From the NCBI GenBank assembly GCA_033442325.1, contig JAWQFM010000019.1, forward strand, positions 95,046-143,652: a DNA stretch of 48,607 nt, read 5' to 3'. The notes beneath the pieces were generated by a model. It had not been told where the DNA came from, did no database searches, and was given only the letters and a program-made list of their open reading frames with translations. This document shows positions 5,247 through 35,934 of this stretch, one piece after another. The stretch's first letter is position 1. Each line of letters opens with the position of its first letter. A program made the translations under genes and the position numbers. Source of the DNA: Salpingoeca rosetta. Taxonomy: Eukaryota > Protista > Choanoflagellata.

Positions 5247-5978
5247 CTTTGCCTGTCGCCCTGTCGCCAAAGCTCAGTACATCAATGTGATTTGTGCTGT
5301 TGATACCTGCGCAATCAGTGTTTAGGGATGTTTCCACCCAAATTTCGCAGACGCAACCAACACATCCTGTAATCAGGCATTGAATCCAACAGCGCTGACA
5401 GAAAACCTCCACAATCCGTGTGATGTGAAGCGTATTTAACGAAGGATAGGTTCGTTCGTCCTTGATGGCGTGGTGGCGATGATTGCACGTTTGTGTTTAC
5501 CCCTTTGTGGCTGTGCGCCTTCTCCGCTTTGCCCAGCTGTCCTGTCAGCGCAAGCAAGCACACGCCGCACAACGATGCACAACCAATCCACCACTCGACC
5601 GAACAGCGGCATCTCTCGCTCGCTCGCTCGCTTGCTTGTTGTTCCCCCCGCCTCACCACTCTCTCTGCCCAGCCAGAGTCACACATTCTCACCTGACACA
5701 CACACACGCCGCACGCGCTGAGTGCGAAATCAAAACAAACAAACAAACAAACCAAGCAAGCGCAAGGTGCAGCCACGCCAACTACCAACCACAAGTCGTC
5801 GCCACATTCACCCACAACCACAAATCAAAACAAACCAAAGCAGGCCCACTCAGGTGCCCGACCTATTTCTCTTGGATGCATGCAGGTTCTGGGAAGCGCG
5901 CACACCCAGATCATCGCGTTCTCCCTGTGGTAGGTCCGGCTTGGCGCAATCCCTGCAACGCCACAGTGATGCGCCGTG

Positions 5979-6260: not shown

Positions 6261-7834
6261 ATGGCATCGCAGCAGCAGCAACAACAGCAAGATGGCTCAC
6301 AGCCACGACAGCAGCAGGCGCTGCCAGCAGCTGAGGTGACCGAGCTGGCACAAACGCTGGAGCGCGATGTCACTGCGGGCCTTGGCGTGTCCTCGGAGCT
6401 TTCCGACGCCCTTGTCTCCCTGTGCCAGGCAGGCGACGTGAACCAGCTCATGCTCATCGTCTCGCGTGTCAGCCTGGAGCAGACTGTCCTCACAGACGAC
6501 TACGACTGCGCGTCCATCCTCCACATCGGTATGCGCTCGTTTTCTTGTGGGTGTATTTGTCTGTCTGTGGAAGGGGGGATATTTGTGCGCGTGGCTGTGT
6601 GTGTTGGGGGGGGAGGTTGTGTGTGTGTGTGTGTCTGTGTGTGTGTGTGTGTGTCTGTGTGTGTGTCTGTGTGTGTGCGCGTGTGTCCCTCGTACACTGG
6701 CTCACCAACTAATCGCTTTCGCTTGCGCTGTTTGCTGTTGCTATTTTTCTTTTTTTGTCAGCTGCTGCGAGTGGCCGCCAAGACATTGTTCACAGCATCA
6801 TTCCGTACGTCCAACTCACACACAATATGTGCCAGCGCCATAATGAACCTGTGCTGAGCCACTTGTGTGCACACAACTGCATTCACACACGCACACACAC
6901 GCACACACACACGCACACGCACACACTCACACACACACGCGCACACGCACACACGCACGCACGCACACACTCACACACTCACACACTCACACACCAACAC
7001 ACAAACACTAACACACATTCACGCGCGCACACTGCAGGCTTGGAGCGCGTGTGCATGCGCAGGACAACAACGGGCGGATTCCCCTTCATGCAGCAGCAGC
7101 ACACGGACGCGTGCAGGTGGTGCAGGACCTGCTGCGCCCCGCACCACAGACCATCGACGCGCAGGACAACGACGGCAACACCGCCCTCCACCTCGCCGCC
7201 AACAACAACGACGCACAGCTGTGCCTCAAGCTCATGCACGCCAACGCAGACCCAGGCGTGCGCAACAACAAAGGCAAGACAGCCCTCGACCTTGCATCGG
7301 ACGAGCACGTGATCCAGGTCATGTCACCGCAATTCAACGGGCCGCAGCTTGTCGACGCCGTCAAGACAGGAAGCTTCTGCACCCTGCAGTCCCTCCTCAC
7401 CCGCAGCAACGTCAACTACACCATCCCCGAGCAACAGTACGTGTGTCTGTGTGTGTCTGTGTGTGTCTGTGTCTGTGTGTGCATGTGTGGGTGCGTGTCT
7501 GTGTCTGTGTGTGCCTGTGTGTCTTTGTGTGTTGGCTGCTCGTCCATCTACTCAACCACGTCTTCCGTCTCACTTTGGCACTTTCCTTCATCTCCTCCTC
7601 CCTTCACTGTCCCCCCCCCCTTTCTCCTGGCCAGACTTGCGTCGCTGCTGCATCTTGCTGCCACGTTGCACAACCCGTCCCTTGTTCATCTGCTGATTCG
7701 CTCCGGCGCCGACATTGACCGCGGCGACGCCCAGCACATGACCCCGCTCCACTGGGCCGCAGCTGCCTGCGACATTGAGGTAGGTGTGTGTCTGTGTCTG
7801 TGTCTGTGCGTCTGTGTCTGTGTCTGTGTGTACG

Positions 7835-7928
<94 letters not shown>

Positions 7929-9326
7929 TGTGTGTGTGGGTGGGTGGGTGGGTGAAATGAGGTCGGGCCGCACTTCACTCTCCCGCTGTCTCTCTCTCTT
8001 TCTCTCTTGCCCCCCCCCCCCGCATCACCTCACCTCCATACCACCACCATACCTCCGCTTCGCTTGTTCTCACCGAACCCAAACCCCACCACCCGTCCAC
8101 CCGTCTTCCCGCTTCTTGTGCAGGCTGCACATGCGTTGCTGACACACGGCGCGACTGTGGACGTGTGCGACGCAACCCTGACCACTCCTCTCCTCAAGGC
8201 CGTCAAATGGTATGCGCCAATGCAAGCACCCGAGTCTGCTTTGATGCATGCTTCGGCCTTCCTGTTATGGCGTCTCGCTCACGCTGTGTCGTCACGCACA
8301 CACGTGAATATGTGCACATGCACACATGCACCCACGCACACACACACACATGCACCCACGCACACATGCACACACACGCACACACTCATATGCACATACG
8401 CACGTGTCTCGTTTCCAGCTGCTGCTATTACATGTTGATGTACCGGAAGGCCACCGCGGCGTCGCCAACCACCCCGCCCTCAGCTGCGTCCAACGCCTCT
8501 CCTCGCGGCCAACCCACAACACGCGCCCGCGCAGCAACGTACCCATACCGGCTGCAGGGCTCCCCCAGCGGCGTTGCGGGCCGATCGGCCGTTGCTCCAG
8601 GCATTCTGCAGGCACCCGCCACCCAGCATGCAGAGGGCAGTGCCACCTCACCCCCACATCATCATCATCATCAGCAGCAGCAGCAGCAGCATCATCAGCA
8701 GCAGCAGCATCATCAGCAGCAACAGCGCGAGTCGCCAGCTGCGCAACAGTTTGCCGCCAAGTACCGCCAGGCAGTCGAGTACGTTAGCTCTTTGTGTTGT
8801 GTTGTGTTGTGTTGTGTTGTGTTGTGTGTCTGTGTTGTGTTGTGTCTGTGTCTGCCTGCCTGCCGTTGGTCTGCCTGCTTGTCTGCCTGATTGTCTGTCC
8901 CCCGATCCTTCTTCGGTCTCACCACGCCACAACACCGCCACGGCCCACCCGTGTACAGGTTCGTGAAGCTGCTGCTGCAGTGTGGTGCCAGTCCCAACAT
9001 TGCCGACAGCAAGGGAAACTGCGCCCTCCACTACACCGCCATCCACTGCCTCCCAGACGTACGCCTCCGACGCGTGATTGCTTTGTTGACATTGTTGGGC
9101 AGAAAACTTGCATGTAGATCACCACTGCTCTTCATAGTGCACGTGTGCTCACACGACAACACGCTCTGCTTTTCGTGCTGTTCAGGTCACGCATGCGCTG
9201 CTGATGCATCCCAGCACGGACGTGGACATTCGCAATCAGGACGGCAACTCCCCTCTCCACCTCGCCTGCCAGCACGACTCGGTGTGTTAGTGTGTTTGTG
9301 TGTGTGTCTGTGTGTGTGTGTGTGTG

Positions 9327-10797: not shown

Positions 10798-10804
10798 AAA
10801 AAAA
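10798..10804 (-). terminator. Pol III T-run terminator of the left tRNA-Ala
   Basis: A7 on the + strand (T7 on the - strand), about 10 nt past the tRNA 3' end. Confidence 0.7.
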
Positions 10805-10814
10805 TATACAGCGT

Positions 10815-10887
10815 TGGAGCTGCCGGGTATCGATCCCGGTACCTCTCGCATGCTAAGCGAGCGCTCTACCACTTGAGCTACAGCCCC
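10815..10887 (-). tRNA. tRNA-Ala (anticodon AGC), intronless
   Basis: Reverse complement reads GGGGCTGTAGCTCAAGTGGTAGAGCGCTCGCTTAGCATGCGAGAGGTACCGGGATCGATACCCGGCAGCTCCA: 73 nt, G3:U70 alanine determinant, anticodon loop TT-AGC-AT. Confidence 0.96.
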
Positions 10888-11187
10888 GTTGCTAACAAGT
10901 GTATGAAAATAGTACTTATGTAATACTCATGAATGCAGTAGATTATTCATGCATAATATATTTGAATTTTCCTTTCGTGCAGCATGTGAAGGAAGACAGG
11001 CATTTGGTGCCACACCCCAACCACTGTCGCACCGCACTGTGTTGTGTTGTGTCCTGACCAGAGGCGAGCTTTGAGTGTTGTCCCTCCTGCTCCCTCCTGC
11101 GGACGACTCCTGAACTCGGGAAGAGCGAGTTGTATCCCCTCTTTCCCTACCGACGTGCCTGCAAGCTAGGGGACGAAATCCGCAAGG

Positions 11188-14100
11188 ATGAGCTCACCAA
11201 AGTCAATGCAGAGGAAGGCATCCCAACGCAGCCATCGCAAGAAGGTGTTCATTTCGCTGCGTTTTGGGGAGGCCGGCCATGCAGGCAAGCTGCTCCAGCG
11301 AGAGTTGGAGCAGGTGCACGGCCTGGACGTGTTTTTGTGTGACGTCAAGCCTGGTGGCAACATGGAAGAAGAGATCATCACGGCTCTCGCGGTCTGTGAC
11401 TTGGCTGTCATCATGGGCACCAAGACGTACGGCAAGAAGACGCCTTCCACTTTCAGCACTTTCGAGGAGCTGCGGTTCATCACAACTGAGCGCAAGCCAT
11501 TCTTTTTCATCAAAATGTGCGAGCGGCTTGAAGAGTCATTTGCGCGGTTTCATCTCCCCGACTCCATCTCCTTTTTTCAGTGGATCCCTGCTTCAAGGGA
11601 TCCAGAATCCATGTCCCTACCACACGATCTCGCCCCAGCCATCGTGGACAAGCTCACCCACATCAGCACCTCTAGCAGCGCGAAGGGCGGCAAAGGTCAC
11701 TCCTCCGTCATCACACGACAGCTCCCAACGACACTGGACGCTAGCCTGACACAGTGGCTGCAGCGCTACAACATGTTGTCCTCCATGGGGCTGGTGCTTG
11801 AGAAGCGCAACATCACAAGTCTTCACAAGTTGGAGCAGGCAACAGAGGCCATGCGGAATCCGAGAAAGCATGCACTTGCGAAGCGACGACGGCAACAGCA
11901 AGAGCAGCAGGGAATGAAACGAGGAGAGCAGAGAAGTAACCCCAAATCAGAAGGAGGCCTGCAACAGTTACATGAGAGCATGTTGATGAAAGAGAAGGAG
12001 TTGAAGCCAGCCGAAATTGCCAAGTTCCGGCGGGCGTGCAAGGCGAGGACCTGGCACAACAACGAGATGGACAGTGAGGGAATGGTGGAGAGCACTGAGG
12101 GGGTGCGCGGACAAGCAGCTGAGAAGCAGGAAGACGACGAAGAGGAATACCACGAAGAAGAACAGGAAGAGATGCAGCAGCAGCAGCAAGCGAGTGTTGC
12201 GCCGACACCTGTGCGTGAAGGTGTGGCAGATGAAACCCTGTTTCGGGAGTGCCTGCAAAAGGTGAGCGACGAGGACGCCAAGGAAAAGATTCTCAGCATT
12301 TGGAACAACACGTGTGGCGAGGAGGTTCGGTGAGTACAGCCTTGACGGCAAGACATGCTCATGAGCTGAGTTGTTGCGGGAATCTGGGATACTTCTTCGT
12401 GTTGTGTTTCAGCGTTACATTATGTCTGTCAAAGGCACGACCTGACAAAGTGCGTGAGATATTCTGAGTGGTTATGATAGCCAATAATTGCACGACGTGT
12501 GTGATGACCGACGAACGCCAGTTGCACACAACATGCACTCTGACACACACACACATGCATACATACACACGCACACAATCACAATCACAACAACCCAGGC
12601 TTCTTTGGGGAAACAACCTTGGAGATATAGGCGGGAAGGCGCTTGCAGAGGCATTGAAGGTCAACACGACGCTAACAGGCCTCTAGTGAGTTGCTTGCTG
12701 TGGTTGCATGGGTGTGAATGTGTGCTTGTGCGTGCGTGTGTGCGCGCACAGGCGTGTGATTGTGTGGTACTGGCACATTGTGTTGATGCTATGGAGTGCA
12801 CACCTGACACAAGGACGTGGTTGCGGTGATAGGAATGAGCAATTGGTTTGGTTGATGACATTTCGAGCCTGGTGTGCTGTTGTGCGCGATTCACCCCCCC
12901 CCCTTGCACACGCACTTCGCACCATGACACAACCACGCACAGCCTTGAAAACAACGACCTTGGACTTGAAGCGGGAAGAGCGATTGCGGAGGCATTGAAG
13001 TTCAATGCAATGCTGGCAGTACTTGAGTGAGTTGTCTGTTGTGGCTGGGTATGAGTGATTGCGTATGTATGCGCTTGTGTTGCAGGTGCACAGTGTGCTG
13101 TTGATACCGTAGTGTGCTGTGTATTGGCTGGCATGGATGACACCGCATTTTATTTTGTATTCGTGTGCGCTTGCCTGGATGGATAGCACTCGTGGTGTAG
13201 TGGCGTGATAGCGATTGTGCTGTGGTATGTGGTAAATGTTGTGATTCAGTCTTCGTCCTGTGGTCGTTGGATATGGTGTGACAGTGTCTGGAGTCCTATG
13301 CTTCGTACGCTGTTGTAGTCGTTGGACGGACATGGTTCTTTGATTCACGGTGATTTGGTATGCGTCTTTATCAGGTGTGAGATTCACTGAACACTACACA
13401 CATGTACACGCACGCACACGCACACACACACACAAACACGCACACGCACACACACACACACACACACAACACCACCCATGGTAACAACATACAGCCTAAG
13501 CTACAACATCCTTGGACCCGAAGGCGGGAAGGCAATTGCAAAGGCACTGAAGGTCAACACGACGCTAACAACGCTTGAGTGAGTTGTTTGTTTTGGCTCT
13601 GTGTAGATGTGATTCTGTGCGTGTGCGTGCGTGGCATTGTCGTATTTGGACTGTTGATGTGATGTGCTCTGATGTATTGTGTGTTGGGTGATTGTGGTGA
13701 ACTATTTTGAATGCGTACGTGATGTGTGCTGTGAATACATGAACTGCGCGCCACGCGAACACTCTATCCAAACTCACACGAATGCATCCAGCCTGTATAA
13801 CAACGGCGTAGGCTTTGAAGCCGGAATCGCGATTGCAGAGGCTCTGAAGGTCAACACGACGCTTACGGAGCTGGAGTAAGCAAAATTCTGCCGTGGTGTG
13901 GGCATGAGATCGTTGTGTCACGTTCCTGGCGCATGGGTGTTACATACCCATTTGTTGGAATGACGCCGCCTGTGCTTCGTCGTGCAGACGTACATTTCAT
14001 GGCTAACGCCTTCATTCCCCCCCCCCCATCGTTGGTGTTCAACTAATTGCACTTCAACAGTGTTGATGACAACTTCATCCCGGGCAAAATCAAATCAGCC

Positions 14101-16377
14101 ATCAATTCGGCTCTGAGGAGAAACAAGAAACTCGCACCTCGCATGCAAGAGCTGAATGCGCTACTTGAGTACGGCTCCGTACCCCTGTCCACGGCCAAGG
14201 TGTTTGTTTGCGGGCATTTTGGCATCGGCAAGACCACCCTAATCAAGACGCTGCAGTCGTCTCCACACGTCTTCAACACCATGGTGCGCCGCCGTCGCAA
14301 AACATATGACGAGCCCGATCGCCCAGATCAGCGCACGCCCGGCATTGAGATGCACAACTTTGCACTCAAGAGAGGCAGGTCGTCTGGCAGCGTCTCCCTC
14401 ACACCATCGCCCGTCAACGCAGCAGAAGGGAGCGAAGACTCATCCCGTCACGAGACAGCGCTCCCGCCGTGCAAGCTGCGGGTGTATGACTTCGCTGGGC
14501 AGGTGGAGTACCACGTGGTGCACGAGCTACTGTTTGCGGACCACAACGCCGTCTTTGTTGTGTGCGTGGACCTGTCCAAGGACATGGCCAACGTGGAGGA
14601 GTCTGTGCTGTACTGGCTTCGCTTCATCAAGACGCGCCTGCACCAAGCCGTGCACCGTTCACCGCATCCGCCACACGTCTTCATTGTCGGCACGAAGGCA
14701 GACAAGCCACACGAGCACAACACGCTGGTGGAGACAGCAGCAGAAGCTATACCACATGCTTCTGGTGTCTCTTTGCCGCCAATGCAGTTTCCGAGTGGTG
14801 ACACGCTGTTGCAGAGCCGACGACTGCAGGAGTGGTTTGGTGACACGATGCGTATCCATCCACACGTGATCCCCCTCAACTGCCATGACTTGGGCAGTGC
14901 CTGCATGCATCACTTGCGCGATTTGCTTCACGCTACCTGGTTGGAGGTCGTGCAGCAAGACATTCAAGTGCCCAAAGTGGTGGAATTGATTGGCGAGGGG
15001 CTGCAACTGTGCAGGAAAGAACATGATGGGGTATGGCAGCTACAGCGGCTGTTTTCCTTCCTTGTTGGGAACGTGGAGGAGTTGACACATGCCCCAGCCA
15101 TCACGAAGACATTTTCTTGAAGGCGCTCAGGTGTGTGTATGTGTGTGTGTTGTGTGTGTGTGTGTGTGTGTGTGTGCGTTCGCATCTGTTCCTGACTTTG
15201 TTGCTGTGCGAACACCTACTACGACCAATGCTCACCACTATCCCCCATACCCACACCGCCTCCTCATTCAGCTACCTACATGTGCGTGGAGACATTTTGT
15301 GGTTCCAGTCCATCCCATCTCTTGCCGACCATGTCTTCGTCTCCCCTTCCTGGCTGCTGAGCAAAGTAGTTGGCCCAGCGCTGGCACCGGCCCACTTTCC
15401 CGTCCACTTGCGAGCGAGGGAAGGGCGCGTGATGTTCTCGGAGATGCAGCGTGTGTTCGGGCGGGTGATGGATCCAGACCTCGTGGTGGACGTGCTGAGC
15501 AGCATGCTGCTGTGCTATGAAGAGGACGCCGCCCTGCATGAGGGTAATGGTGACCGTGTTTTCATGCTGCCGTCGCGGCTGGAGTGGCGCCCAGAGCGTC
15601 TGTGGGGAGAAGATGGGTCTGTGGAAGTGTTTGCCGGCCGCCGCCTGCAAATTGCGCAACACCACGGGATGATTTTCCCCCCTGGCGTGTTCCCGCGTGT
15701 GCAGTCACGCATCGTGCAGTGTTTGGATTACACCACAAGCCTATGGCAGACAGGGTTCTTTGGCCTGCTGTCTTCTGTTGAGTGCTTGGGCCGTATTGTT
15801 AGCGACACGTGCATTGATCTGTGGGTCCGCTGCCCCGCCACACACAAGGAGCACGCTTGGCTGGCCTTGGACATGGTGAGTTATGATGATGTTGGTGGTG
15901 GTGGTGGTGATGGTGGTGGTGTAGATGTGTATGTGTCGATGTGTCGTGTGTGGGTGAAAAGTAGTTTGCGACACGGCTTTTCTGTGGTGATGCTAAAGTT
16001 CTCACGTTCGTTCACACACACACAACACACACACACAACACACACAACACACACAACACACACAACACACAACACACACACACATACACACATCATGTTA
16101 GATGCTGAGCGAGGTTGAGGAGGAGGTTGAGGGCATCGAGTACGACCATCTCGTGCTGAGCCACGCCCACCTGTCCTCCTACCGGCGCCATCCAGCCGGA
16201 TACCCGCTCCAGGACGTGGAGGACGCCGCCGCCGCCGGTGAAACGCTCATCATTCGCTCGGTGGACGATACATCCAGCCCTGGCAAGAAGGAACACGCGC
16301 GGGACGAGCTGAAGAACCTCCTCCGTGAAGACCTGTTCCTGGCCTACGTAGCTGATGCGTCTGATGTGTGTGTTTGA
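11188..16377 (+). CDS. Roco protein TIR-SAM-like-LRR(RI-type x4-5)-Roc-COR; frameshift in COR (possible pseudogene or assembly error)
   Basis: Exons 11188-12329, 12599-12685, 12943-13026, 13495-13578, 13792-13875, 14061-15130, 15272-15875, 16102-16377. TIR: KVFISLRF...CDLAVIMGTKTY...TFEELRFI. SAM-like: SLTQWLQRYNM...ITSLHKL...LKPAEIAKFRRA. Roc: GHFGIGKTT, RTPGI, VYDFAGQVEY, IVGTKAD. COR: LKALSYLHVRGDILWF, FMLPSRL, FPPGVFPRVQ. Confidence 0.9.
12599..13875 (+). repeat. Tandem exon-intron modules, each exon encoding one ribonuclease-inhibitor/NLRC3-type LRR
   Basis: Exons of 87, 84, 84 and 84 nt, all with phase-2 boundaries. Consensus LxxNxLGxEGGKAIAEALKVNTTLTxL. Confidence 0.9.
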
Positions 16378-16704
16378 CATTCTGATTTATGTTAAGGCGT
16401 GATTCCCACTCCACTCATGTGCTCCTCCTGAATTTTGAGTTCCTGCCCTGCGTCTTTGGAGGGAGCTGACGGACCGCTCCAAACCGAACCTTCTTCGGCA
16501 CTTTCTTGATGCATTGGGTTGTTTGCTTTGTGTGGCGCCTGTTTCGACGTCAAGGAGTTCATTGACGAATACATACGAAGAGCGCAAGGAAGTGGTGTTC
16601 AGCGTACACCGTCACAAGAAGGAGGCGCTCGTCGACCTCCACAAACAGACACACACACACGCACCAATTTTCATGTATGCAATTTCCACCGCTTTCAGCA
16701 ATTC

Positions 16705-16777
16705 GGGGCTGTAGCTCAAGTGGTAGAGCGCTCGCTTAGCATGCGAGAGGTACCGGGATCGATACCCGGCAGCTCCA
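16705..16777 (+). tRNA. tRNA-Ala (anticodon AGC), identical to the copy at 10815-10887
   Basis: Same 73-nt sequence GGGGCTGTAGCTCAAGTGG...CGGCAGCTCCA on the + strand. Confidence 0.96.
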
Positions 16778-16789
16778 ATGCTGTTTCAA

Positions 16790-16797
16790 TTTTTTTT
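16790..16797 (+). terminator. Pol III T-run terminator of the right tRNA-Ala
   Basis: T8 starting 13 nt after the tRNA 3' end. Confidence 0.7.
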
Positions 16798-16887: not shown

Positions 16888-17103
16888 ATGTTCAAGTTCA
16901 AGGACTGGGCCGGCGGTGGCAGTGGCGGTGGAGGCAGAAGCCGGTCACAGCAGTCAGCGCAGGACTCATCACCAGCAGGCGAAGCATCAGACGGGAGCCA
17001 AGTGCGTGTGCATGCTGCGATGTTGTGCATGCTGCGATGTTGTATGTATGTTGCTGTTCCTTTGCCGCATGGCCAGCTGTCTCCAACACACACACACACA
17101 CAC

Positions 17104-17177
<74 letters not shown>

Positions 17178-17536
17178 TCTCTCTCTCTCATTCAGGCGTC
17201 GTCGTTATCCCGGGATCAGCTGCTCCAGCGACTACACACACTCTCGGAGAAGAACGAACGCTTTGAGCTGAGATTCAGAGGTTCGCACCACCACTTGACA
17301 CTTTGATACACCACTCGACACCGACCGCCACGCCGTGCGTTTATCCGACGTGCCTGGCGCACAGCTCACTTCACGCACGCACTTGTTCTTCACAGATGTT
17401 GTCGCCGCTTACAAGTCGCTGCTGAAGGAGAAGCAGGCGCTAGAACTGACGGTACGGGTGTCTTGCGCCATATCGCACGGCAGCGATTGCGCACCTCTGC
17501 CTTTCTCAAACCCATCACTTACACTTTCCCCTTGCA

Positions 17537-24629: not shown

Positions 24630-35934
<11,305 letters not shown>

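What the first reader, a model, noticed from the sequence alone, without database searches (positions are those of the whole stretch)
10815..16777. Two identical, outward-facing tRNA-Ala genes bracket exactly the Roco gene, forming a ~6-kb inverted-repeat cassette
Seen: identical 73-nt tRNA-Ala(AGC) copies at 10815-10887 (-) and 16705-16777 (+). Their 3' trailers are related (A[C/T]GCTGT...T-run), and both have AGCAA just upstream. The only gene between them is the immune-like Roco, and the wider neighbourhood is conserved housekeeping genes. The Roco lies in the 5' upstream zone of both tRNAs. Known: tRNA upstream regions are integration targets (Ty1/Ty3, Dictyostelium TRE5/DGLT-A), and tRNA genes act as chromatin barriers. 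Inference: this may be a tRNA-anchored accessory 'defence slot' that was inserted, is insulated, or is invertible/exchangeable by recombination between the tRNAs.
Basis: partly seen in the sequence, partly recalled or inferred. Interest (0 to 1): 0.75.

Follow-up and report, generated by a model that had tools for sequence, protein, structure and literature searches.

The report
Inverted tRNA-Ala pair around Roco gene
Two identical alanine tRNA genes do flank one immune-like Roco gene in reverse orientation. This is one of about 19 such reversed tRNA pairs in the genome, not a mobile cassette, yet these pairs enclose Roco genes far more often than chance allows.

Summary
Identical tRNA-Ala(AGC) genes lie at 10815-10887(-) and 16705-16777(+), facing outward, and one TIR/LRR/Roc/COR gene lies between them.

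- **Identity.** It means little, because all five AGC copies in the genome are identical.
- **Local duplicate.** The two copies alone share a 3' trailer and an AGCAA leader. Similarity stops after about 91 nt.
- **Not mobile.** I found no target-site duplication, no mobility gene and no shared ends with similar loci.
- **Age.** The left tRNA sits 300 nt upstream of the Roco start. A paralogue on another contig has the same tRNA 270 nt upstream, so this adjacency predates that gene duplication. Four other paralogues have no tRNA.
- **Genome-wide.** I located about 104 tRNA genes, and 38 sit in 19 same-type inverted pairs 0.4-17 kb apart.
- **Enrichment.** Leaving this locus out, 3 of 18 pairs (Thr, Trp, Lys) each enclose one Roc-COR gene, against 0.12 expected (P about 2.5e-4).

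Best reading: a local inverted tRNA duplication that persisted beside a fast-turnover gene. Insulation and inversion remain untested.

Earlier notes of this scan describe sister cases in the same genome (Thr, Trp, Met, Glu, His pairs), each judged alone.

The parts
10815..10887 (-). Left tRNA-Ala(AGC) gene, 73 nt, transcribed leftwards, away from the Roco gene
   Evidence: ARAGORN. Rfam RF00005 at 58.9 bits. 100% identical to the four other AGC copies in the genome.
16705..16777 (+). Right tRNA-Ala(AGC) gene, 73 nt, transcribed rightwards, away from the Roco gene
   Evidence: ARAGORN. Rfam RF00005 at 58.9 bits.
10798..10888 (.). Left arm of the inverted repeat: the tRNA, about 17 nt of 3' trailer with its T run, and 1 nt of leader
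   Evidence: the repeat finder pair I2, 91 nt at 95%. The trailer is shared only by this pair. No similarity beyond it.
16704..16794 (.). Right arm of the inverted repeat
   Evidence: the repeat finder pair I2. Sequence read.
10888..11187 (+). 300-nt promoter and 5' leader region of the Roco gene, lying inside the tRNA-bounded interval. Blocks of it are conserved with the paralogues.
   Evidence: Upstream regions of the four paralogues align above shuffles, z 3.1 to 18. Shared motifs are visible. The tRNA-to-ATG distance is 300 nt here and 270 nt at the C2 paralogue.
11188..12333 (+). Roco gene, first long exon, beginning at an ATG, with a TIR-like N-terminus
   Evidence: ORF list. TIR_2 at 17.1 bits, below the cut-off. 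The C29 paralogue, whose 26467-26665 stretch aligns to this exon at 79% nt identity, scores TIR_2 29.9 bits at C29:26466-26747, over the cut-off.
12590..13895 (+). Array of four related 116-nt units, probably one LRR exon plus the start of its intron each. This is the sensor part of the same gene.
Evidence: Direct-repeat family D12.
14047..15120 (+). Roco gene, exon with the Roc GTPase domain
   Evidence: Pfam Roc at 36.1 bits, cut-off 27. Genome search hit at C19:109503-109748.
15033..16118 (+). Roco gene, exon with the COR-A-like region. Paralogue homology continues to about 16370.
   Evidence: Pfam COR-A at 23.4 bits, below the 35.3 cut-off. Genome search hit. DNA homology to paralogues runs to query position 5483.
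7051..8142 (+). Left neighbour: ankyrin-repeat gene, outside the interval
   Evidence: Pfam Ank at 67.4 bits.
16889..17266 (+). Start of the right neighbour gene. Its ATG lies 112 nt downstream of the right tRNA. It is outside the interval.
   Evidence: Sequence. ORF list. No Pfam match.

Best explanation
The two tRNA-Ala(AGC) genes are a local inverted duplicate of one working Pol III gene. The surviving copied unit is only about 90-100 nt: a few bases of leader, the tRNA, and the trailer up to the T-run terminator. The Roco gene is simply the resident of the interval. Its upstream tRNA neighbour is old, being shared with the paralogue on contig C2. The second copy was placed, or survived, just past the gene's 3' end.

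Such same-type inverted tRNA pairs are a general feature of this genome: 19 pairs holding about 37% of the tRNA genes I could locate.

Inferred steps. The pairs arise by DNA-level local inverted duplication or gene conversion of tRNA-bearing modules. Younger examples still have 1.1-kb arms at 94-97% identity, and at the C26 locus the arm includes the Roco promoter and its first 19 codons. Inverted copies persist because recombination between them inverts rather than deletes the DNA in between, whereas direct copies a few kb apart would delete it. They accumulate next to dispensable, fast-turnover gene families such as Roco, which tolerate or undergo such rearrangements. On this reading the pair is not a mobile element and not a purpose-built switch.
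For: - **Pair-specific ancestry.** The trailer and AGCAA leader are shared only by the C19 pair. The repeat is limited to 91 nt, and the flanks beyond are at chance level.
- **Uninformative identity.** All five AGC copies are identical.
- **Old adjacency.** The C2 paralogue (81-88% nt identity) has the same tRNA, divergent, 270 nt upstream of its ATG against 300 nt here. The promoter regions are homologous.
- **Not required.** The C19b, C17, C29 and C1 paralogues have no tRNA within 8-10 kb.
- **Genome-wide pattern.** I located about 104 tRNA genes. They form 19 adjacent same-type inverted pairs and 11-12 direct pairs within 20 kb. On the first 89 genes alone, 26 such pairs stood against 0.09 expected at random.
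- **Spacing.** All but one direct pair are 2.9 kb apart or less. Inverted pairs reach 17 kb.
- **Young versions.** C26 has 1.13-kb arms at 96.8%, C10 at least 1.17 kb at 94%, C5 at least 1.16 kb at 95.4%. The C26 arm includes the start codon and 19 codons.
- **Turnover.** C4b is an inverted 92-98% segmental copy of part of C4a, with a tRNA at the truncation point.
- **No shared element.** Arms of different loci have nothing in common.
Against: - A neutral by-product does not by itself predict the strength of the Roco excess (3 of 18 intervals against 0.12 expected, P about 2.5e-4). The 'permissive neighbourhood' step is inference.
- The five Roco paralogue loci without tRNA pairs show no flanking inverted repeats. 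Roco genes as such therefore do not visibly generate them.
- There is no pair of intermediate age, with arms at 70-85% identity, in my sample. The 91-nt pairs may therefore have a different origin from the 1.1-kb ones.
- The unit's borders coincide with the Pol III transcription unit, which would also fit an RNA-mediated copy.
- My tRNA list is incomplete.
Confidence: 0.6

Rival explanations
1. Paired tRNA genes act as chromatin boundaries. TFIIIC/Pol III-bound tDNAs on both sides isolate a Roco/TIR gene, whose mis-expression could be harmful, from its neighbours. Selection keeps such brackets once a duplication has made them.
For: Four independent loci, each with a different tRNA (Ala, Thr, Trp, Lys), each enclose exactly one Roc-COR gene. 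The excess is P about 2.5e-4. Both tRNAs here look fully functional, with a cloverleaf and a T-run terminator. tDNA barrier activity is established in budding and fission yeast and in human cells; this last point rests on my own knowledge and was not checked here.
Against: Four of six close paralogues have no tRNA nearby, and 51 of 55 COR-A loci are not bracketed. Other pairs enclose unrelated genes: a TPR gene, a large BLTP-like ORF and, by unchecked earlier notes, KDM6-like and propeller genes. Some intervals are too short to hold a gene (0.4-1.4 kb). No chromatin or expression data were available.
Confidence: 0.2
2. The second tRNA copy is a retro-copy of the primary Pol III transcript. The pre-tRNA, from its start site to its terminator, was reverse-transcribed and inserted into the next intergenic region. 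It stayed active because tRNA promoters are internal.
For: Similarity covers about 8 nt of leader, the tRNA, and the trailer up to the T run, and then stops abruptly. The Lys-CTT copies at C4a show the same limits, about 10 nt of leader to the terminator.
Against: There is no poly(A) tail and no target-site duplication. Only two partial non-LTR elements are reported for this species (PMC6875170). A retro-copy has no reason to land 5.8 kb away on the same chromosome, or to be inverted so regularly. Other pairs have 1.1-kb arms of plainly genomic DNA. Constraint on leader and terminator could by itself preserve just this stretch of an older, larger repeat.
Confidence: 0.1
3. Recombination substrate. 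The inverted tRNAs let the interval flip, or be exchanged with other tRNA-flanked Roco cassettes, so diversifying or switching the receptor gene.
For: There are 73 nt of perfect inverted identity. Three of the five AGC copies lie next to members of this Roco subfamily. Gene conversion is frequent in this genome according to earlier notes, which I did not check.
Against: The promoter region conserved with the paralogues lies inside the interval, so flipping moves the gene and its promoter together and cannot turn the gene on or off. At 73 nt the repeat is short for efficient homologous recombination (own knowledge). Each Roco locus uses a different tRNA, so cassettes could not be swapped between most loci. 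No recombinase gene was seen. Only one assembly could be examined.
Confidence: 0.07
4. Mobile element or targeted insertion. A Roco-carrying element inserted at a tRNA gene, or between a tight tRNA pair, as Ty3 or TRE5 elements do.
For: Tight 'empty' inverted pairs exist (Gln 0.4 kb, Pro 1.0 kb, Ile 1.4 kb). The unit shared by the dispersed paralogues, about 10955-16370, almost fills the interval.
Against: No target-site duplication. No reverse transcriptase, integrase or transposase was found in the ORFs of the interval that I scanned. Four of five paralogues elsewhere lack the tRNA ends. Arms of similar loci are unrelated. Orientation relative to the tRNA is mixed. At C26 the arm overlaps the gene's own first codons.
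Confidence: 0.03

Closest known systems
Homogeneous tDNA pairs and clusters in eukaryotic genomes, including the choanoflagellate Monosiga (Bermudez-Santana et al. 2010, PMC2888827)
   Same: Neighbouring tRNA genes are nearly always of the same type, which points to local duplication. That paper reports almost exclusively homogeneous pairs for Monosiga.
   Different: Judging from the passages I read, the paper considers tRNAs that lie close together, and it reports that most pairs are parallel. Here the pairs are inverted, lie 0.4-17 kb apart and enclose whole protein-coding genes. An excess of one gene family inside them is not described there.
tDNA chromatin barriers (yeast HMR tRNA-Thr, fission-yeast centromere tRNA clusters in inverted repeats, human tDNA insulators); from my own knowledge, not checked here
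   Same: Active tRNA genes stand on both sides of a domain. In fission yeast they sit in mirror-image repeats.
   Different: No chromatin evidence exists for this locus. Most Roco paralogues lack flanking tRNAs. The enclosed unit is a single ordinary-looking gene, not silent chromatin.
Spaced palindromes kept alike by arm-to-arm gene conversion (for example human Y-chromosome palindromes); own knowledge
   Same: Inverted arms with a unique spacer. The arms at C26, C10 and C5 are 94-97% identical and contain 100%-identical blocks.
   Different: The arms here are tiny (91 nt to about 1.2 kb). The gene of interest sits in the spacer, not in the arms. At this locus only the tRNA itself is shared.
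tRNA-targeted retrotransposons (Ty1/Ty3, Dictyostelium TRE5-A and DGLT-A)
   Same: Extra DNA lies in the upstream zone of tRNA genes.
   Different: There are no retroelement genes, no LTRs and no target-site duplication. At other loci the Roco gene lies downstream of both tRNAs. The published TE survey of this species lists 13 LTR and 7 DNA transposon families plus two partial non-LTR elements, and the passages I read say nothing about tRNA targeting (PMC6875170).
Brown-algal LRR-ROCO candidate immune receptors with one LRR per exon
   Same: The cargo gene combines LRR exons with Roc-COR and a TIR-like domain, and it belongs to an expanded, fast-changing family.
   Different: I know of no report linking those genes to tRNA genes. 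The tRNA bracket is the new element here.

Membership tests
tRNA gene (Rfam RF00005), tRNA-Ala(AGC) | Cloverleaf scoring above the family's gathering score | tested here: met
   58.9 bits against 29 for both copies. ARAGORN calls both tRNA-Ala, anticodon AGC.
tRNA gene (Rfam RF00005), tRNA-Ala(AGC) | Pol III terminator (T run) shortly after the 3' end | tested here: met
   A run of 7 T's or more begins within about 12 nt downstream of both copies.
tRNA gene (Rfam RF00005), tRNA-Ala(AGC) | Transcribed and aminoacylated | not testable with these tools
   No expression data were available.
DNA transposon with terminal inverted repeats | Target-site duplication directly outside the two arms | tested here: not met
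   The bases outside 10798 and 16794 are unrelated.
DNA transposon with terminal inverted repeats | Transposase or other mobility gene inside, or several copies sharing the same ends | tested here: not met
   The three long + strand ORFs of the interval that I scanned with Pfam match only TIR_2, Roc/Ras and COR-A. Smaller and opposite-strand ORFs were not scanned. Arms of similar loci share nothing. Four of five paralogues lack tRNA ends.
tRNA-targeted retroelement insertion (Ty3 / TRE5-A type) | Reverse transcriptase, integrase or LTRs in the inserted DNA | tested here: not met
   None was found among the interval ORFs scanned. No long direct repeats bound the interval.
tRNA-targeted retroelement insertion (Ty3 / TRE5-A type) | Fixed side and distance relative to the tRNA | tested here: not met
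   Across the 19 pairs, 10 are divergent and 9 convergent. Roco genes lie upstream of both tRNAs at C19 and C4a, and downstream of both at C26 and C10.
Invertible DNA switch | Inverted repeats at both ends | tested here: met
   91 nt at 95%, of which 73 nt are identical.
Invertible DNA switch | Promoter or coding part placed so that inversion changes expression | tested here: not met
   The promoter and leader conserved with the paralogues (about 10955-11187) and the whole gene lie inside the interval.
Invertible DNA switch | Both orientations present in a population; a dedicated recombinase | not testable with these tools
   Only one assembly was available. No reads.
tDNA chromatin boundary | TFIIIC/Pol III occupancy and a change of chromatin state at the tRNAs | not testable with these tools
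   No chromatin data.
tDNA chromatin boundary | If needed by the gene family, brackets should recur in paralogues | tested here: not met
   Two of six close paralogues have any adjacent tRNA. Four of 55 COR-A loci are bracketed.
Roco protein (Roc GTPase followed by COR) | Roc domain above the Pfam cut-off | tested here: met
   36.1 bits against 27.
Roco protein (Roc GTPase followed by COR) | COR domain directly after Roc | tested here: inconclusive
   COR-A at 23.4 bits, below the 35.3 cut-off, but in the expected place. The paralogues give the same weak hits. The spliced protein was searched exon by exon only.
Homogeneous tDNA pair (Bermudez-Santana et al. 2010) | Adjacent tRNA genes of the same isoacceptor family | tested here: met
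   Both are Ala(AGC) and no other tRNA lies between them.
Homogeneous tDNA pair (Bermudez-Santana et al. 2010) | Close enough together to fall within that paper's definition of a tDNA cluster | tested here: inconclusive
   The spacing is 5.8 kb, with a whole protein-coding gene between the two tRNAs. The passages I read do not state the cluster threshold, so I cannot say whether 5.8 kb exceeds it.

The most novel reading that the evidence does not exclude
In this choanoflagellate, inverted pairs of identical tRNA genes preferentially enclose single Roco/TIR immune-like genes. This has happened at least four times independently, each time with a different tRNA. The paired tDNAs may serve these genes as boundary elements, or as a deletion-proof frame that isolates or stabilises them. 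That would be a tRNA-based way of packaging innate-immune-type genes in the closest relatives of animals.
Probability: 0.2. Interest if true: 0.75.

Novelty: new variant of a known kind. Interest (0 to 1): 0.5.

Why it matters
tRNA genes are usually treated as scattered housekeeping genes. Here about a third of those I could locate sit in mirror-image pairs that enclose whole genes, and Roco/TIR genes are over-represented inside them.

If the excess reflects function, it would give a simple, testable case of Pol III genes organising the expression or stability of immune-type receptor genes in a genetically tractable relative of animals.

If it reflects only where rearrangements are tolerated, it still marks where this genome is structurally fluid. 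It also explains several 'cassette' sightings of this scan with one process.

Tried and rejected
- **Forward scan blocked.** I planned to fetch 20 kb around all 55 COR-A loci and scan them for tRNAs. I replaced this with coordinate-only tests using an Rfam search and three tRNA patterns.
- **RF00005 genome search incomplete.** It scored only 63 of about 498 candidates and missed all five Ala-AGC genes. The pattern searches, which carry their own controls, filled most of the gap. No Gly or Phe gene could be identified, and the tRNA-Met pair of note s1-440305 was not found.
- **TPR_12 genome search unusable.** It was too incomplete for statistics, with 107 of 656 candidates scored.
- **Proximity of any tRNA cluster to COR/TIR loci.** This is only modestly enriched: 5 of 41 clusters against 1.15 expected, P about 0.007. 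The signal lies in the inverted pairs, not in tRNAs in general.
- **Residual similarity beyond the 91-nt repeat.** None found.
- **A shared transposon end among loci.** None found.
- **Remnant tRNA-Ala in paralogues without a tRNA.** None found.
- **Roc search for hidden Roco genes in the seven unexplained intervals.** None found.
- **The search for homologous proteins on the 1346-aa ORF at 25448-29488(-).** I hoped to reach an annotated record and a second assembly. It found nothing at E <= 1e-50. That ORF is probably not a real protein.
- **ESM Atlas on the 1273-aa ORF inside the Arg pair.** It gave only weak lipid-transfer-protein leads.
- **Species name.** Salpingoeca rosetta comes from earlier notes of the scan.
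- **Human DNA.** I took no contig for human.
Full report
**What is there**

The window is contig C19:95046-143652 of a 55.4-Mb genome in 68 contigs. It is a spliced eukaryote. Earlier notes of this scan name it Salpingoeca rosetta; I did not verify that independently.

ARAGORN finds just two tRNAs in the window, tRNA-Ala(AGC) at 10815-10887(-) and 16705-16777(+). Infernal confirms both at 58.9 bits and finds no other Rfam family between 9000 and 19000. The two genes are identical and face outward. The inverted repeat is 91 nt long, 10798-10888 / 16704-16794, at 95%.

The 5,817 nt between them hold one + strand gene. Its parts are:

- a first exon from the ATG at 11188, with a weak TIR_2 match;
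- an array of 116-nt repeat units at 12590-13895;
- a Roc exon at 36.1 bits;
- a COR-A-like exon at 23.4 bits.

Because the gene is spliced, I searched it exon by exon by reference and did not build the joined protein.

**Is the pair more than chance, and is identity informative?**

All five AGC copies in the genome are 100% identical, so identity says nothing about age. The flanks are informative. The C19 pair alone shares the trailer A[C/T]GCTGT plus T run, and an AGCAA in the leader. The three copies on contig C2 have CGGT[G/T] trailers.

Two of five copies lying within 5.9 kb has a chance probability of about 0.002. The pair is therefore a local duplicate.

Similarity stops abruptly. The 300-600 nt on either side align no better than shuffled sequence, and BLAST finds only the 100-nt core. 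The surviving unit runs from about 8 nt of leader to the terminator.

**History of the locus**

The gene has close paralogues, 81-88% identical in DNA, at these places:

- C2:395861-402351(-)
- C19:338145-346584(+)
- C17:478318-490767(+)
- more distant ones on C29 and C1.

The C2 paralogue has a tRNA-Ala(AGC) in the same divergent layout. Its 5' end lies 270 nt upstream of the ATG, against 300 nt here. The upstream regions of all four close paralogues are homologous (z 3 to 18 over shuffles). The tRNA-Roco adjacency therefore predates the C19/C2 gene duplication.

The C19b, C17, C29 and C1 paralogues have no tRNA and no tRNA remnant within 8-10 kb. The 3' end of the C2 paralogue abuts a 7.4-kb run of N, so a second tRNA there cannot be excluded.

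**Not a mobile element**

- There is no target-site duplication outside the arms.
- No mobility gene appears among the three long + strand ORFs of the interval that I scanned.
- GC content is not aberrant.
- The arms of comparable loci share no sequence.
- The published TE survey of S. rosetta lists 13 LTR and 7 DNA transposon families and two partial non-LTR elements. The passages I read say nothing about tRNA targeting (PMC6875170).

**The genome-wide picture**

I combined an Rfam tRNA search with three tRNA patterns. The two class-I patterns gave 85 matches, against 8 for their reversed controls. The third, looser pattern was noisier, with 38 matches against 23 for its control, so there I accepted only repeated or clearly tRNA-like matches. 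Together with the Ala search, this located about 104 tRNA genes.

Thirty-eight of them form 19 adjacent same-type inverted pairs, 0.4-17 kb apart. Seventeen pairs are identical over the matched core. Ten are divergent and nine convergent. There are also 11-12 direct pairs, and all but one of those are 2.9 kb apart or less. On the first 89 genes, random placement predicts 0.09 same-type pairs within 20 kb, against 26 observed.

This fits the report that tDNA pairs in the choanoflagellate Monosiga are almost all of one type (PMC2888827).

**The Roco excess**

I crossed these pairs with the complete list of COR-A matches, 55 in all with every one of the 56 candidates scored. Three further pairs each enclose one Roc-COR gene.

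| Locus | tRNA pair | Interval | Gene inside |
|---|---|---|---|
| C10:625792-637009 | Thr-CGT | 11 kb | Ank, Roc, COR-A, COR-B |
| C26:196530-201675 | Trp-CCA | 5 kb | COR-A, TIR-type tail |
| C4:2148464-2155840 | Lys-CTT | 7.2 kb | Roc, COR-A, COR-B, TIR |

Leaving out the discovery locus, the 18 pairs enclose 118.5 kb in total. That predicts 0.118 COR-A matches, and 3 are seen (Poisson P = 2.5e-4).

The signal is specific to inverted pairs. No direct pair encloses a COR match. tRNA clusters in general are only mildly enriched near COR/TIR loci, 5 of 41 against 1.15 expected.

The other pairs enclose:

- a TPR_12 gene (Ser-AGA);
- a 1273-aa ORF with weak lipid-transfer-protein leads (Arg-ACG);
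- a TIR-only fragment (second Lys cluster);
- according to unchecked earlier notes, a KDM6-like paralogue (Glu) and propeller-family genes (His).

Seven intervals are unexplained, but they contain no Roc, COR or TIR match.

**How such pairs form**

The Trp, Thr and Ser pairs sit in inverted arms of 1.13 kb (96.8%), at least 1.17 kb (94%) and at least 1.16 kb (95.4%). These arms contain stretches of 100% identity. They are DNA-level duplications, probably kept alike by gene conversion.

At C26 the arm contains the tRNA, the promoter, the start codon and the first 19 codons of the Roco gene. A copy of the gene's 5' module therefore sits, reversed, past its 3' end.

The second Lys cluster, C4:2360418-2363300, is an inverted copy at 92-98% identity of the first cluster's two tRNAs plus its TIR exon. 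A third tRNA sits at the point of truncation.

The Ala pair here and the Lys pair at C4a retain only about 90-100 nt. These may be old, decayed versions in which only the constrained transcription unit survived. They may instead be copies of that unit alone. I could not decide between the two, and I found no pair of intermediate divergence.

**Reading**

Shown:

- The pair is a local duplicate.
- The left tRNA is an old neighbour of the gene.
- The locus is one of many inverted tRNA pairs.
- Such pairs enclose Roco genes far more often than expected.
- There are no transposon hallmarks.

Inferred:

- Inverted copies persist because recombination between them does not delete the interval.
- They accumulate beside dispensable, fast-changing gene families.

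An on/off inversion switch is unlikely, since the conserved promoter lies inside the interval. Insulation by paired tDNAs remains a live minority reading. It cannot be a general requirement, because 4 of 6 close paralogues and 51 of 55 COR loci are not bracketed.

**Relation to earlier notes of the scan**

Sister loci (Thr, Trp, Met, Glu, His pairs) were noted before in this same genome and judged one at a time as local duplications. I re-derived the Thr and Trp loci independently and found the Lys locus here. What this report adds is the count across the genome and the statistical excess of Roco genes.

Noticed in passing
G000:C4:2360418-2363300 (loci L026, L027, L031): This second tRNA-Lys(CTT) cluster is an inverted copy, at 92-98% identity, of the first cluster 210 kb away. 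It carries two tRNAs and the TIR exon but lacks the Roc-COR part, and a third tRNA sits about 120 nt beyond the point where homology ends. A 371-aa TIR-only ORF remains.
   Followed up: partly
G000:C9:1766823(-) and 1770962(+); also C9:1566467 and 1649139: This inverted tRNA-Ala pair has cores that differ only in the anticodon (TGC against CGC) over the 54 matched bases. That looks like an anticodon change within a duplicated pair.
   Followed up: no
G000:C11:132321-132392(+): The best-scoring tRNA of the genome (71.9 bits) has a class-I-length body, but its anticodon loop reads CTTAAAA in the matched string. That would be anticodon UAA, which is normally carried by long-arm Leu tRNAs. I read this by eye from a partial sequence only.
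   Followed up: no
G000:C14:79253/82141(+), C14:143952/146815(-), C28:28132/31028(-): There are three sets of direct tRNA-Asp(GTC) pairs with almost the same spacing (2,888, 2,863 and 2,896 nt). This suggests a 2.9-kb unit copied to three places, two of them in opposite orientation on one contig.
   Followed up: no
5' leaders of tRNA genes: window 10888-10920 and 16675-16704, and loci L003-L005, L010, L011: Many tRNA genes carry an AATTTC- or ATTTTC-like word 15-35 nt upstream of the mature 5' end. It may be an upstream Pol III promoter element. I did not test it against shuffles.
   Followed up: no
G000:C2:388403-395840 (locus L012): A 7,438-nt run of N starts 20 nt beyond the last homology of the C2 Roco paralogue. 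It is either an assembly gap or a withheld stretch, and it hides that gene's 3' neighbourhood.
   Followed up: no
About 1.4-1.5 kb upstream of the C17 paralogue (near C17:476.8 kb) and about 0.7 kb upstream of the C19b paralogue (near C19:337.4 kb): A 104-nt element, 97% identical, lies in opposite orientation upstream of two Roco paralogues. It may be a small repeat or MITE.
   Followed up: no
window 25448-29488 (-): This 1346-aa open frame lies in a stretch of strongly skewed base composition and has no protein relative at E <= 1e-50. It is probably a low-complexity artefact or lies on the wrong strand.
   Followed up: partly
G000:C10:625.8-627.7 kb and 636.1-637.0 kb (loci L008, L009): Next to each tRNA-Thr(CGT) lies a tandem array with a unit of about 124 nt that matches the region beside the other copy at 83-90%.
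   Followed up: partly
COR-A, TIR and TPR_12 matches genome-wide: Many Roc-COR-TIR and TPR genes lie within 100 kb of contig ends, for example C26:19551, C30:20314, C4:36589, C12:4482 and C34:17010. The four tRNA-bracketed Roco genes are all internal.
   Followed up: no
G000:C2:2656422(-)/2661442(+), C12:1345321, C12:1685758, C34:160371: The tRNA-Tyr(GTA) genes carry introns that differ in sequence and length between copies. Two of the genes form another inverted pair 5 kb apart.
   Followed up: no
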